A stretch of DNA of 62,952 nt, counting the filler, from Octopus bimaculoides (Eukaryota): assembly GCF_001194135.2 (NCBI RefSeq). It is 7 parts of 7 records of this genome, joined end to end, with 100 filler letters (N's around TTAATTAATTAA, not from the genome) between each part and the next. Parts side by side here need not be neighbours in the genome. Positions count along the whole stretch, not along the records: positions 27,352 to 41,660 come from NC_068987.1; 6 more parts are not named here. One strand, given 5' to 3'. How positions within the stretch are numbered: the stretch's first letter is position 1; each line of letters begins with the position of its first letter. Positions 28,410 to 35,600 of this stretch are shown piece by piece. The notes beneath the pieces are model-generated. The model was not told where the DNA came from. It saw only the letters and a program-made list of their open reading frames with translations, and made no database searches. A program made the translations under genes and the position numbers.

Positions 28410-28623
28410 TACAGTTATATATTTAAGAGATGAGGACTTATATACATTATTTACATTTGACGGATATTTGTTCTCATCTTGTTTGTTGTTAACACAACGT
28501 TTCGGCTGATATACCCTCCAGCCTTCATCAGGTGTCTTGGGGAAATTTCAAACCTGGATTCTCATTTGTATGGTATTTTTCGATGTTGTTGTTATTATTA
28601 TTGTTGTTGTTGTTGTTGTTGTT

Positions 28624-28701
<78 letters not shown>

Positions 28702-28762
28702 ATTATTATTATTATTATTCAGGTCACTGCCAGGAATCCAACTCGGAATATTGGGGTTAGTA
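28410..28762 (-). mobile_element. Family D element, copy 2: partial tRNA-like head, (AAT/AAC/AGC)n linker, hammerhead body and tail
   Basis: Minus strand reads TACTAACCCCAATATTCCGAGTTGGATTCCTGGCAGTGACCTGAAT (B-box-like), microsatellite, then the body ending CCTCATCTCTTAAATATATAACTGTA, which is collinear with copy 1. Confidence 0.9.
28491..28536 (-). ncRNA. Minimal type I hammerhead ribozyme motif, best-preserved copy
   Basis: Minus strand: GACAC (stem I) CTGATGA (core) A GGCTG-GAGGGTATAT-CAGCC (5-bp stem II) GAAACGTT (core, ACGT palindromic stem III, GUU triplet) GTGTT (stem I). Predicted cut between 28496 and 28495. Activity untested. Confidence 0.75.
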
Positions 28763-29394
28763 NNNNNNNNNNNNNNNNNNNNNNNNNNNNNNNNNNNNNN
28801 NNNNNNNNNNNNNNNNNNNNNNNNNNNNNNNNNNNNNNNNNNNNNNNNNNNNNNNNNNNNNNNNNNNNNNNNNNNNNNNNNNNNNNNNNNNNNNNNNNNN
28901 NNNNNNNNNNNNNNNNNNNNNNNNNNNNNNNNNNNNNNNNNNNNNNNNNNNNNNNNNNNNNNNNNNNNNNNNNNNNNNNNNNNNNNNNNNNNNNNNNNNN
29001 NNNNNNNNNNNNNNNNNNNNNNNNNNNNNNNNNNNNNNNNNNNNNNNNNNNNNNNNNNNNNNNNNNNNNNNNNNNNNNNNNNNNNNNNNNNNNNNNNNNN
29101 NNNNNNNNNNNNNNNNNNNNNNNNNNNNNNNNNNNNNNNNNNNNNNNNNNNNNNNNNNNNNNNNNNNNNNNNNNNNNNNNNNNNNNNNNNNNNNNNNNNN
29201 NNNNNNNNNNNNNNNNNNNNNNNNNNNNNNNNNNNNNNNNNNNNNNNNNNNNNNNNNNNNNNNNNNNNNNNNNNNNNNNNNNNNNNNNNNNNNNNNNNNN
29301 NNNNNNNNNNNNNNNNNNNNNNNNNNNNNNNNNNNNNNNNNNNNNNNNNNNNNNNNNNNNNNNNNNNNNNNNNNNNNNNNNNNNNNNNNNNNNN

Positions 29395-29750
29395 ACTTGG
29401 CTTGCCGGGTCTTCTCACGCACAGCACATTTCCAAAGGTCTCGGTCAGTAGTCATCGCCTCGGTGAGGCTCAATGTACGAAGGTCTTGCCTCACCACCTC
29501 AGCCCAGGTCTTCCTGGGCCTACCTCTTCCACGGGTTCCTTCAACTGTTAGGGTGTGGCACTTTTTCACGCAGCTATCCTCATCCATTCTCACCACATGT
29601 CCATACCAGCGCAATCGTCTCTCTTGCACACCACAACTGATGCTTCTAATGTTCAGCTTTTCTCTCAAGATACTTACACTCTGACGGGTATTCACATTGA
29701 CATTACACATCCAACGGAGCATACTGGCTTCATTCCTTGCGAGCTTACGT
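29395..29750 (-). mobile_element. 5'-truncated RTE-like LINE, C-terminal ORF intact in the visible part
   Basis: RKLARNEASMLRWMCNV...QERRLRWYGHVVRMDEDSCVKKC...GRGRPRKTWAEVVRQDL...EKTRQAK with no stops. The 3' end runs into gap 28763-29394. Confidence 0.92.
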
Positions 29751-29975
29751 AATAATAATAATAATAATAATAATAACAACACCAACAACAGCAACAACAA
29801 CAACAACAACAATAACAATAACAACAACAACATTGAAAAATATCTTAGGGATGAGAACCCAGGTTCAAAATTTCCCCAAGACACCTGATGAAGGCTGGAG
29901 GGTATATCAGCCGAAATGTTGTGTTAACAGTAAACAAGATGAGGACAAATATCCGTCAAATGTAAATAATGTATA
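29751..29975 (+). mobile_element. Family D element, copy 3 (linker plus hammerhead body), inverted relative to copy 2
   Basis: Near reverse complement of 28441-28720. Confidence 0.9.
29880..29925 (+). ncRNA. Hammerhead motif with a single stem III change (GAAACGTT to GAAATGTT)
   Basis: GACAC-CTGATGA-A-GGCTG-GAGGGTATAT-CAGCC-GAAATGTT-GTGTT. Confidence 0.6.
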
Positions 29976-30103
29976 TAATTTAATGTTGTACAGTAGTTTT
30001 ATCCTTGTAAATTCTGAGTTCAAAGTATTAACCTCTTCTCTCAGAGCTTAATACACTAAATACCTGTCATCATCATCATCATCGTCATAATAATAAATAC
30101 TGA

Positions 30104-30166
<63 letters not shown>

Positions 30167-30214: not shown

Positions 30215-30313
30215 CACACAAGTAGATGAGGCCTGATCCATAAATGGTATTAAATTTTCCAGAAATGCTATCAGAAATATAACCGCCAATGATTGGCATC
30301 ACATAACTCATAC
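30215..30313 (-). CDS. Internal coding exon (99 nt, phase 1-1) of a POT/PTR2 family (SLC15-like) proton-coupled oligopeptide transporter
   Basis: Acceptor TTGCAG|GT and donor G|GTAAG. Peptide MSYVMPIIGGYISDSISGKFNTIYGSGLIYLC(G) fits the PTR2 TM2-TM3 signature (GGxxxDxxxGxxxTIxxxxxxYxxG). Length is a multiple of 3. No other exons were found by eye. Confidence 0.85.
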
Positions 30314-30356
30314 CTGCAATTAAATAATGAATTAATTAGAGGCACACCTAAGCAAT

Positions 30357-30643
30357 ATAAAATGAAATGTAAGTGTCCTATAAAATGAAATGTAAGTGTC
30401 CGATAAAATGAAATGTAAGTGTCCTATAAAGTGTCCTATAAAATGAAATGTAAGTGTCTTATAAAATGAAATGTAAGTGTCCTATAAAATGAAATGTAAG
30501 TGTCCTATAAAATGAAATGTAAGTGTCTTATAAAATGAAATGTAAATGTCCTATAAAATGAAATGTAAGTGTCCTATAAAATGAAATGTAAGTGTCCTAT
30601 AAAATGAAATGTAAGTGTCCGATAAAATGAAATGTAAGTGTCC
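30357..30643. repeat. 23-bp minisatellite (ATAAAATGAAATGTAAGTGTCCT), 12 units plus one 12-nt partial unit
   Basis: Units counted directly; variants end CCT, CCG or CTT. No spacers. Confidence 0.95.
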
Positions 30644-30926: not shown

Positions 30927-30961
<35 letters not shown>

Positions 30962-30978
30962 TTATGTATGTATGTGTA

Positions 30979-31024
<46 letters not shown>

Positions 31025-35374: not shown

Positions 35375-35600
35375 AAACATTTGAGAAATTGAACAAATAT
35401 AAGGAGCTAGAAGATGAAATCAGAAGAACGTAGCATCTCAAAGCAACAACATTATTTATCCTCATTGGGATACTTGGAATGACATCAAAAGAAGCAAACA
35501 AATATGTAGACCAAATCCTTGGCAGCTTCAAAATAAGTGAATTGCAAATAATAATACTTATGAGCACCTCTCATATTCTACATAAAAATCTCTCCATGTA
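35375..35600 (+). mobile_element. R4/Dong-type LINE C-terminal fragment
   Basis: KYKELEDEIRRT*HLKATTLFILIGILGMTSKEANKYVDQI...LMSTSHILHKNLSM resembles the end of the RLE domain. Confidence 0.65.

What the first reader, a model, noticed from the sequence alone, without database searches (positions are those of the whole stretch)
28491..28536. Intact hammerhead in sense orientation inside the SLC15-like transporter intron
Seen: the best-preserved hammerhead is on the minus strand, about 1.7 kb downstream of the donor of the minus-strand exon (30215), with no artificial linker between them (one N gap intervenes). The predicted cut is after GUU, between 28496 and 28495. Inference: if the intron spans this site, the pre-mRNA carries a potential self-cleavage site that could compete with splicing. 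Intronic hammerheads are known in amniote genes such as RECK. Activity may be low because stem III is only a palindromic stub, which typically needs dimerisation.
Basis: partly seen in the sequence, partly recalled or inferred. Interest (0 to 1): 0.7.

Follow-up and report, generated by a model that had tools for sequence, protein, structure and literature searches.

The report
Transposon-type minimal hammerhead relic in intron
The hammerhead ribozyme motif is really there, but it is the stripped-down kind carried by Penelope-like retroelements, one of two inverted repeat copies sitting by accident in a probable intron of an octopus-like peptide-transporter gene, and it is unlikely to cut the transcript.

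Summary
Minus strand 28536..28491 reads GACAC-CUGAUGA-A-GGCUGG[8 nt]UCAGCC-GAAA-CG-UU|GUGUU. The catalytic boxes are intact, helix I has 5 bp, helix II has 6 bp, and the predicted cut lies between 28496 and 28495. This is 1.68 kb downstream of a POT/SLC15-like exon (30313..30215, minus strand). A strict descriptor found no such motif in 2000 shuffles.

It is not a RECK-type intronic ribozyme. It has no helix III in cis, and no Rfam hammerhead model matches it even at E<=10. It shows every hallmark of the "min-HHR" of Penelope-like elements:
- an extra nucleotide between A9 and G10.1
- a G10.1-C11.1 pair
- a palindromic 15.2/16.2 pair
- a short helix I

It lies in a 146-nt unit preceded by an (AAT)n(AAC)n microsatellite. 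A second copy, 91% identical, sits inverted at 29750-29978. Between the two copies are a 5'-truncated LINE fragment and an assembly gap.

Folding predicts that the active fold is disfavoured. A competing hairpin takes the cleavage-site strand. A transcript spanning both copies would lock 45 of the 46 ribozyme bases into a roughly 250-bp duplex.

No Penelope-like element ORF lies nearby, and no further copies could be retrieved, so the element family is inferred from architecture alone.

Verdict: an ordinary retroelement relic and a new member of a known kind, of low interest.

The parts
28491..28536 (-). Minimal type-I hammerhead motif (sense copy). It has helix I, CUGAUGA, an extra A, helix II, GAAA and CG-UU. 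The predicted cut is between 28496 and 28495.
   Evidence: Sequence read and regex scan. The strict descriptor matched only here, with 0 of 2000 shuffles matching. There is no Rfam hammerhead hit.
28438..28583 (-). 146-nt unique part of repeat copy 1, which carries the hammerhead. It has a sharp 3' end at ...AAATGTAAATAATGTATATAA.
   Evidence: Inverted repeat I1, pairwise alignment and a count of 13 differences in 146 nt against copy 2.
28584..28720 (-). (AAT)n(AAC)n(AGC)n microsatellite directly 5' of copy 1. Copy 2 has the same layout.
28763..29394 (.). Assembly gap of 632 N between the two copies. Its content is unknown. It probably hides the 3' UTR of the LINE fragment.
   Evidence: A related LINE in L002 has about 650 nt between its stop codon and its tail.
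29395..29749 (-). 5'-truncated C-terminal fragment of a LINE ORF2 (...RLRWYGHVVRMDED...GRGRPRKTW...). It abuts the microsatellite of copy 2.
   Evidence: Homologues include an Octopus vulgaris predicted protein at 80% identity. DNA identity is 86-87% to L001 and L002, and the alignment ends exactly at 29749.
29750..29832 (+). (AAT)n(AAC)n microsatellite directly 5' of copy 2.
29833..29978 (+). 146-nt unique part of repeat copy 2, inverted relative to copy 1. Its hammerhead is at 29880-29925 and carries C15.2->U (GAAAUGUU). It is antisense in a minus-strand transcript.
30215..30313 (-). 99-nt exon encoding (x)MSYVMPIIGGYISDSISGKFNTIYGSGLIYLC(G). It is POT/SLC15-like (TM2-TM3 region), with an AG acceptor at 30315-30314 and a GT donor at 30214-30213.
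   Evidence: A PDB sequence search matched SLC15A1/A2/A3/A4 and bacterial POTs at the equivalent residues, best E 0.0016. It is the only POT-like segment in the piece. There was no Pfam hit and no word-sharing homologue in the protein database.

Best explanation
The site is a genuine minimal hammerhead motif (min-HHR) of the kind carried in the terminal repeats of Penelope-like retroelements and their non-autonomous derivatives.

It sits in a 146-nt unit that follows an (AAT)n(AAC)n microsatellite. The unit is present twice, head to head in inverted orientation. A later LINE insertion and an assembly gap lie between the copies.

In the life cycle of such elements, two ribozyme copies on a longer-than-unit or tandem transcript pair through the palindromic ACGU to build a shared helix III. 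Each core then cuts the other strand after U17, trimming the transcript to unit length (inferred from the literature, not shown here).

At this locus that condition is not met:
- There is only one sense copy.
- Its cleavage-site strand is predicted to be held in a competing hairpin.
- On a minus-strand pre-mRNA the upstream antisense copy would pair with it into a long duplex.

It therefore most likely does nothing, or next to nothing, to the transporter pre-mRNA. Its intronic, sense position is an accident of insertion.
For: Motif is real:
- Core boxes, helix I (5 bp) and helix II (6 bp) are present.
- The strict descriptor matched in 0 of 2000 shuffles.

Class features that Cervera and De la Pena list as emerging without being searched for (PMC4209133) are all present:
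- a nucleotide between A9 and G10.1 (A28524)
- a G10.1-C11.1 pair
- palindromic 15.2-16.2 (CG)
- no helix III or loop 3
- helix I of 4-5 bp
- helix II longer than the canonical 4 bp

The same paper reports 'dual min-HHRs close to each other but in opposite strands' and mostly solo motifs from truncated elements.

The motif is repeat-borne. Two copies share 133 of 146 nt, have an identical 3' end, and each has a microsatellite on its 5' side.

Penelope-like insertions are described as 5'-truncated, often with an adjacent inverted copy. They are biased to microsatellites and troublesome for short-read assembly, with the hammerhead near the 3' end (PMC8557442).

Penelope-like elements are present and recently active in Octopus vulgaris (PMC13282606). 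The LINE fragment points to an octopus-like genome.

The same core and stem II recur in 21 unrelated metagenome contigs. 14 of these also carry a palindromic 15.2/16.2 with U16.1 and H17, which the search pattern did not require.

Predicted inactivity:
- The hammerhead monomer fold is -13.0 kcal/mol against an MFE of -13.6.
- The double hammerhead is -24.3 against -27.2 for two monomers and -31.4 for the dimer MFE.
- Helix I probability is about 0 in the 146-nt unit.
- The inverted-repeat duplex is -320 kcal/mol and pairs 45 of the 46 ribozyme bases.
- Min-HHRs showed no detectable cleavage as monomers in vitro.

Intronic copies of such elements are common: about 44% of Xenopus retrozyme copies overlap introns.
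Against: - No reverse-transcriptase or GIY-YIG coding remnant was found anywhere in the 14.3-kb piece. The link to Penelope-like elements therefore rests on motif architecture and arrangement, not on homology.
- Only two copies are known, and they may descend from one event, so a dispersed repeat family is not demonstrated. No copy occurs in 20 kb of O. vulgaris sequence or in a related 1.6-kb contig. A translated search found nothing.
- Both copies begin at the same point after the microsatellite, which is not what independent random 5' truncations would give.
- Energy predictions ignore tertiary contacts, co-transcriptional folding and protein factors.
- The gap (632 N) hides part of the locus.
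Confidence: 0.7

Rival explanations
1. The motif is an active intronic ribozyme that cleaves the SLC15-like pre-mRNA and competes with splicing, in the manner of the RECK and CTCL hammerheads of amniotes.
For: - The catalytic boxes are intact and in sense orientation downstream of a plausible exon.
- No other POT-like exon lies between the donor and the motif.
- The hammerhead stretch differs at only 1 of 46 positions between the two copies, against 12 of 100 in the rest of the unit (one-sided Fisher p 0.044).
Against: - There is no helix III in cis and no sense partner within the piece.
- No HH9, HH10 or Hammerhead_1 match was found at E<=10.
- The motif is part of a duplicated repeat, not a unique conserved element.
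- The low divergence is shared by the whole 3' 111 nt of the unit, so it is not specific to the ribozyme.
- A competing hairpin and the antisense copy are predicted to sequester it.
- This class shows no monomer cleavage in vitro.
Confidence: 0.07
2. The unit is not Penelope-derived. It could be the tail of a SINE or LINE that carries an internal microsatellite. It could also be a locally duplicated piece of unique DNA, in which case the hammerhead-like motif belongs to a so far undescribed short non-autonomous element of cephalopods.
For: - Both copies start at the same position after the same kind of microsatellite.
- A LINE fragment lies directly between them.
- The 42 nt before copy 1's microsatellite (…GAGTTGGATTCCTGGCAGTGACC) loosely resemble a tRNA B-box region (read by eye).
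- No Penelope ORF lies nearby.
Against: - Two related LINE copies with their 3' ends (L001, L002) lack the unit.
- The LINE alignment stops exactly at the microsatellite, as expected for a separate 5'-truncated insertion.
- No tRNA or SINE-head signal appeared in Rfam at E<=10.
- The motif's detailed features are those published for Penelope-type min-HHRs.
Confidence: 0.18
3. Chance resemblance: an AT-rich repeat that happens to contain CUGAUGA and GAAA.
For: - Loose CTGANGA...GAAA matches occur by chance in the piece and in L001.
- Thermodynamic z-scores of the region are unremarkable, at -0.5 to -1.0.
Against: - The strict descriptor matched in 0 of 2000 shuffles.
- Four features that were not searched for agree with the published class.
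- The motif is kept in both copies.
Confidence: 0.03

Closest known systems
Minimal hammerheads (min-HHR) in the pseudo-LTRs of metazoan Penelope-like elements (Cervera and De la Pena 2014, PMC4209133)
   Same: - Type-I topology with no helix III or loop 3.
- An unpaired nucleotide between A9 and G10.1.
- A G10.1-C11.1 pair.
- Palindromic 15.2-16.2, allowing a dimeric helix III.
- Short helix I (5 bp) and a longer helix II (6 bp).
- A second copy nearby on the opposite strand.
- Flanking microsatellite and an assembly gap, as described for Penelope-like insertions (PMC8557442).
   Different: - No RT or GIY-YIG ORF and no direct pseudo-LTR pair lie within 14 kb.
- Only two copies are known.
- Both copies start at the same point.
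- Sequence homology to any Penelope-like element could not be tested.
Non-LTR retrozymes and satellite hammerheads of newts, Schistosoma, corals and mussels (PMC7229834; bioRxiv 10.64898/2026.07.22.740005)
   Same: - A short (about 150 nt) AT-rich unit carrying a type-I hammerhead that depends on dimerisation.
- Monomeric derivatives are scattered through genomes, many of them in introns.
   Different: - Retrozymes are head-to-tail tandem arrays with canonical hammerheads (helix III of 1-2 bp plus a palindromic loop, and loop1-loop2 contacts).
- Here there is an inverted pair, no tandem array and no helix III.
[quoted passage not shown]
   Same: Sense orientation inside a probable intron of a protein-coding gene.
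   Different: - Those are single-copy, conserved across species, have a stable helix III and match Rfam RF02275/RF02277.
- This one is repeat-borne, lacks helix III and matches no Rfam model.
CChMVd (+) hammerhead with an extra A between A9 and G10.1 (De la Pena and Flores 2001; cited in PMC4209133, otherwise from my own knowledge)
   Same: The same extra A at the 5' base of helix II, which shows the insertion is compatible with catalysis.
   Different: That is a viroid type-III hammerhead with all three helices and replicates by rolling circle. There is no sequence relation.

Membership tests
Hammerhead ribozyme (general) | Conserved core boxes C3-U4-G5-A6-N7-G8-A9 and G12-A13-A14 | tested here: met
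   CUGAUGA lies at 28531-28525 and GAA at 28503-28501, followed by A15.1 at 28500.
Hammerhead ribozyme (general) | Three helices around the core, including helix III with an A15.1-U16.1 pair, and cleavage after H17 | tested here: inconclusive
   Helix I (5 bp) and helix II (6 bp) are present. U16.1 and U17 are present. The sequence ACGU has no loop, so helix III cannot form in cis and needs a second molecule.
Hammerhead ribozyme (general) | Self-cleavage activity | not testable with these tools
   This needs in vitro transcription or in vivo end mapping. Thermodynamic prediction disfavours the active fold.
Rfam hammerhead families (Hammerhead_1, _II, _3, HH9, HH10) | Covariance-model score at or near the gathering threshold | tested here: not met
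   No hammerhead family is listed at E<=10, either in the whole piece or in a 201-nt search around the site.
Penelope-like-element min-HHR | No helix III or loop 3; palindromic 15.2-16.2 for a dimeric helix III | tested here: met
   GAAA-CG-UU in copy 1 gives an ACGU palindrome. Copy 2 has UG, which allows wobble pairs only.
Penelope-like-element min-HHR | Unpaired nucleotide between A9 and G10.1, and a G10.1-C11.1 pair | tested here: met
   A28524 is the extra nucleotide, and G28523 pairs with C28504. The features are as listed in PMC4209133.
Penelope-like-element min-HHR | Short helix I (4-5 bp) and enlarged helix II | tested here: met
   Helix I has 5 bp and helix II has 6 bp (output).
Penelope-like-element min-HHR | Located in the pseudo-LTR of an element encoding RT and a GIY-YIG endonuclease | tested here: not met
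   No Pfam domain was found in any stop-free segment of >=35 aa on either strand of the piece. The literature says most genomic copies are solo motifs from truncated elements, so this does not exclude derivation from such an element.
Penelope-like-element min-HHR | Genome-wide consensus families with covariation in helices I and II | not testable with these tools
   Only two copies are available and their helices are identical. No eukaryotic genome search tool was available, and the indirect searches failed.
Non-LTR retrozyme | Head-to-tail tandem repeats of 150-450 bp, each with a canonical type-I hammerhead | tested here: not met
   The two copies are inverted, not tandem. No direct repeat of the unit exists in the piece.
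Amniote-type conserved intronic hammerhead (HH9/HH10) | Single-copy, with a stable helix III and conserved at the orthologous intron | tested here: not met
   The motif is duplicated in a repeat, has no helix III and has no Rfam match. Orthologous conservation could not be tested.
POT/SLC15 transporter gene (context) | Exon peptide homologous to the TM2-TM3 region of POT proteins, with splice signals | tested here: met
   14 of the 15 PDB hits listed are POT/SLC15-type peptide transporters, aligned at about residues 48-125, and the best E-value is 0.0016. AG and GT signals flank the exon. Support is modest: there was no Pfam hit and no database homologue sharing words.

The most novel reading that the evidence does not exclude
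The evidence does not exclude two more novel readings.

First, the 146-nt unit with its internal microsatellite could be a cephalopod-specific, non-Penelope short element that has recruited a minimal hammerhead.

Second, the sense copy could be cleaved in vivo and so modulate the SLC15-like transcript. This would need host factors or pairing in trans with transcripts of other copies.

A related possibility is that the inverted pair acts as a roughly 250-bp intronic dsRNA, serving as a substrate for A-to-I editing or small-RNA production in an animal known for heavy RNA editing.
Probability: 0.05. Interest if true: 0.55.

Novelty: new member of a known kind. Interest (0 to 1): 0.2.

Why it matters
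If the explanation is right, this is one more solo copy of a ribozyme class already known to occur by the thousands in invertebrate and lower-vertebrate genomes. It adds a cephalopod example and little else.

It is useful as a caution. An intact hammerhead core in an intron is not evidence of a regulatory ribozyme when three things hold: the motif lacks helix III, it is repeat-borne, and it is paired with an antisense copy.

It would matter more if cleavage were detected in vivo. The in vivo activity and role of Penelope-type minimal hammerheads is still an open question (PMC4209133, PMC8557442).

Tried and rejected
- **Rfam scans.** I scanned the whole piece and a 201-nt sub-window at E<=10. 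No hammerhead family matched. The mir-297 and similar hits are microsatellite artefacts far below gathering scores.
- **Is the unit the LINE's 3' tail?** I fetched an O. vulgaris locus (L001, 20 kb) and an ENA contig (L002) through LINE homologues. Both have the LINE 3' region but not the unit. Rejected.
- **Getting more copies.** All attempts failed.
  - A six-frame translation alignment of the unit, searched against the protein database, gave nothing at E<=10.
  - Exact-pattern scans of bacterial/archaeal genomes and of viral contigs gave nothing.
  - The metagenome scan returned 21 contigs with the same core and stem II but unrelated flanks.
  - Looking up a window ORF to locate the source contig failed.
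- **Orthologous gene.** I tried to reach it through the exon peptide. The query was first rejected as too short, and then no word-sharing homologue was found.
- **More POT exons.** I searched concatenated stop-free translations against PDB sequences. Only the known exon was recovered.
- **Supplementary files.** None are held for the two key papers.
- **Literature search for the motif string.** Only an unrelated primer turned up.
- **Ribozyme-specific conservation between the two copies.** The nominal p of 0.044 comes from a variable 5' end of the unit, not from the ribozyme itself. Rejected as evidence of selection.

Full report
**Observation**

On the minus strand, 28536..28491 reads GACAC CUGAUGA A GGCUGG AGGGUAUA UCAGCC GAAA CG UU GUGUU (regex scan).

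In hammerhead numbering:
- C3-A9 occupies 28531-28525.
- An extra A is at 28524.
- Helix II pairs 28523-28518 with 28509-28504. It has 6 bp, starts with G10.1-C11.1 and ends with a G.U.
- G12-A14 occupies 28503-28501.
- A15.1 is at 28500, C15.2 at 28499, G16.2 at 28498, U16.1 at 28497 and U17 at 28496.
- Helix I pairs 28536-28532 with 28495-28491 (5 bp).

A strict descriptor of a minimal hammerhead matched only this site in the 14.3-kb piece. It matched nothing in 2000 dinucleotide-preserving shuffles scanned on both strands.

There is one qualification. No helix III exists in cis, because ACGU cannot fold on itself. No Rfam hammerhead family (types I, II, III, HH9, HH10) is reported at E<=10, either for the piece or for a 201-nt search around the site.

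**Gene context**

The minus-strand exon is 30313..30215 (99 nt). It has an AG acceptor at 30315-30314 and a GT donor at 30214-30213.

Its peptide, MSYVMPIIGGYISDSISGKFNTIYGSGLIYLC, matches solved POT/SLC15 transporters at the equivalent position. These include residues 63-94 of human SLC15A1 and 68-98 of PepTSo. The best E-value is 0.0016, and 14 of the 15 hits listed are peptide transporters of this kind.

Support is modest:
- Pfam gives nothing for so short a peptide.
- The large protein database holds no sequence sharing three 5-residue words with it.

Concatenated stop-free translations of the minus strand were searched against PDB sequences. They gave no POT match between the donor and the low end of the piece. 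In the rest of the piece only the known exon was recovered.

The motif is therefore 1679 nt downstream of the exon, in sense, with one N gap (28763-29394) in between. It probably lies in the intron. The next exon is outside the piece, so this cannot be proven here.

**The motif is part of a repeat**

A second copy lies on the plus strand (core 29885-29916, whole motif 29880-29925). It carries one change, C15.2 to U, giving GAAAUGUU.

The two copies belong to a 146-nt unit, at 28438-28583 on the minus strand and 29833-29978 on the plus strand. The units share 133 of 146 positions and end at the same base (...AAATGTAAATAATGTATATAA). Each is preceded on its 5' side by an (AAT)n(AAC)n microsatellite of similar layout.

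The copies are head to head, with their 3' ends pointing outward. Between them lie two things:
- A 5'-truncated C-terminal fragment of a LINE ORF2, at 29749..29395 on the minus strand.
- A 632-N assembly gap.

The LINE fragment's closest named relative is a predicted protein of Octopus vulgaris at 80% identity. DNA identity to an O. vulgaris chromosome locus and to an ENA contig is 86-87%, and the alignment stops exactly at the microsatellite. The source is therefore very probably an octopod.

The two related LINE copies that include their 3' regions lack the 146-nt unit. The unit is therefore not the tail of that LINE.

**What kind of hammerhead it is**

Cervera and De la Pena (PMC4209133) defined a minimal hammerhead found in the terminal repeats of Penelope-like elements. 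It is scattered by the thousands, mostly as solo motifs, in invertebrate, fish, amphibian and reptile genomes. They list features that emerged without being part of their search descriptor:
- a conserved G10.1-C11.1 pair
- palindromic 15.2-16.2
- a short helix I of 4-5 bp
- a long helix II

All of these are present here. They also report pairs of such motifs close together on opposite strands.

Craig et al. (PMC8557442) describe Penelope-like insertions as strongly 5'-truncated and often accompanied by an adjacent inverted truncated copy. They are biased to microsatellites and prone to break short-read assemblies, with the hammerhead near the 3' end. This matches the present arrangement.

Penelope-like elements are present and recently active in O. 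vulgaris, with 31 families and 336 recent insertions (PMC13282606).

A metagenome scan for the same core and stem II with any loop returned 21 contigs with unrelated flanks. Two are GC-rich and look bacterial; the rest are AT-rich and look like animal host DNA. 14 of the 21 also have a palindromic 15.2/16.2 followed by U16.1 and H17, which the pattern did not require. This hammerhead design therefore recurs widely.

**What could not be shown**

No reverse-transcriptase or GIY-YIG domain is detectable in any stop-free segment of 35 residues or more in the piece.

I could not obtain further copies of the unit:
- A search with six-frame translations of the unit found nothing.
- Scans of prokaryotic genomes and viral contigs found nothing.
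- A look-up intended to locate the source contig failed.

Assignment to the Penelope class therefore rests on architecture and arrangement. The two copies could descend from a single event, because they start at the same point. A dispersed family is inferred, not demonstrated.

**Likely activity at this locus**

All of this is inferred from folding predictions.

For a 66-nt construct:
- The hammerhead monomer fold (helices I and II) is worth -13.0 kcal/mol, against an MFE of -13.6.
- The double hammerhead, with a shared ACGU/ACGU helix III and swapped helices I, is worth -24.3 kcal/mol. Two separate monomers give -27.2, and the dimer MFE is -31.4.

Within its own 146-nt unit:
- Helix II has probability about 0.8.
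- Helix I has probability about 0. Its 3' strand, including the cleavage site, is taken by a hairpin GUUGU-GUUA-ACAAC with probability 0.98.
- Copy 2 has lost that hairpin, but it is antisense to the gene.

A minus-strand transcript spanning both copies would contain the antisense copy first. The two arms, with their microsatellites, are predicted to form a duplex of -320 kcal/mol. That is 239 kcal/mol better than the arms folded apart, and 45 of the 46 ribozyme bases would be paired to the antisense copy.

Experimentally, a single min-HHR showed no detectable cleavage, and dimers or trimers showed only low cleavage.

No sense partner exists in the 13 kb upstream or the 1.1 kb downstream that are available.

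Sequence conservation gives no sign of selection on the ribozyme. The 1-in-46 against 12-in-100 contrast (p 0.044) reflects a variable 5' third of the unit. The whole 3' 111 nt is equally well kept.

The RECK-type hammerheads are single-copy, conserved ribozymes with a stable helix III and their own Rfam models. None of these features is met here.

Intronic copies of hammerhead-bearing retroelements are commonplace. About 44% of retrozyme copies overlap introns in Xenopus, even though they are somewhat depleted there.

The mechanistic suggestion of self-cleavage competing with splicing is improbable.

**Verdict**

This is a genuine but minimal, retroelement-type hammerhead motif. It is one of an inverted pair, lying by accident in a probable intron, and is most likely inert there. 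It is a new member of a known kind, and interest is low.

The residual interesting possibilities need wet-lab or whole-genome data. They are in vivo cleavage with host factors, a cephalopod-specific non-Penelope carrier element, or a role of the inverted pair as intronic dsRNA.

Noticed in passing
window 30356-30643: A 23-nt minisatellite (TATAAAATGAAATGTAAGTGTCC, about 12 copies, with 46- and 69-nt higher-order periods) starts about 40 nt upstream of the exon's acceptor, inside the upstream intron.
   Followed up: no
window 30102-30166: A perfect (GAAA)16 tract lies about 50 nt downstream of the exon's GT donor. Read on the gene strand it is (TTTC)16, a long pyrimidine-rich tract early in the intron.
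   Followed up: no
window 35434-35598 (+), 37565-37837 (+), 40020-39748 (-), 37488-37198 (-), 39656-39459 (-), 41406-41652 (+): By eye and by BLAST, the piece is a patchwork of retroelement and transposon remnants.
- Two ...PIIVGSLGT...LLGTARIIRKAL-type LINE C-termini.
- A LINE RT C-terminal fragment (…FCYLGDQIS…ILHGSET…).
- An integrase-like C-terminus (…ISVDRLKKAFIE).
- A pogo/Tigger-like C-terminus.
- A copy of the LINE/SINE tail seen in the L002 3' UTR.

None reaches a Pfam hit.
   Followed up: partly
window 30941-31012, 41272-41342 and others: Rfam 'mir-297', 'mir-1277' and similar matches all fall on (TATG)n, (TA)n or (TGCA)-rich simple repeats. They score far below the gathering thresholds and are artefacts of low complexity.
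   Followed up: yes
L002 1491..1469 (minus strand): The ENA contig with the related LINE carries, just past the LINE tail and a (TG)n tract, a hammerhead-like string: CUGAUGA-A-GAG[CUCCA]CUC-GAAA-CAUU-GUGUGU. Its 3' part (GAAACAUUGUGU) differs by one base from the octopus motif. However, 15.2/16.2 is not complementary and helix I is poor. It may be a decayed relative or chance.
   Followed up: partly
L003-L023 (metagenome contigs): At least five distinct families of minimal hammerheads share the core and stem II CUGAUGA-A-GGCUG...CAGCC-GAAA. Their helix III stubs differ: GC, UA, CG or CAUG. They occur in AT-rich contigs of several metagenomes, and each family has its own conserved flanks. Two further contigs (L009, L019) are GC-rich and bacterial-looking, and lack the 3' features.
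   Followed up: partly
window 28721-28762 (minus strand): The 42 nt between the gap and copy 1's microsatellite (TACTAACCCCAATATTCCGAGTTGGATTCCTGGCAGTGACCTG) match nothing else fetched. The stretch contains a string loosely like a tRNA B box (AGTTGGATTCC). What element it belongs to is unknown.
   Followed up: partly
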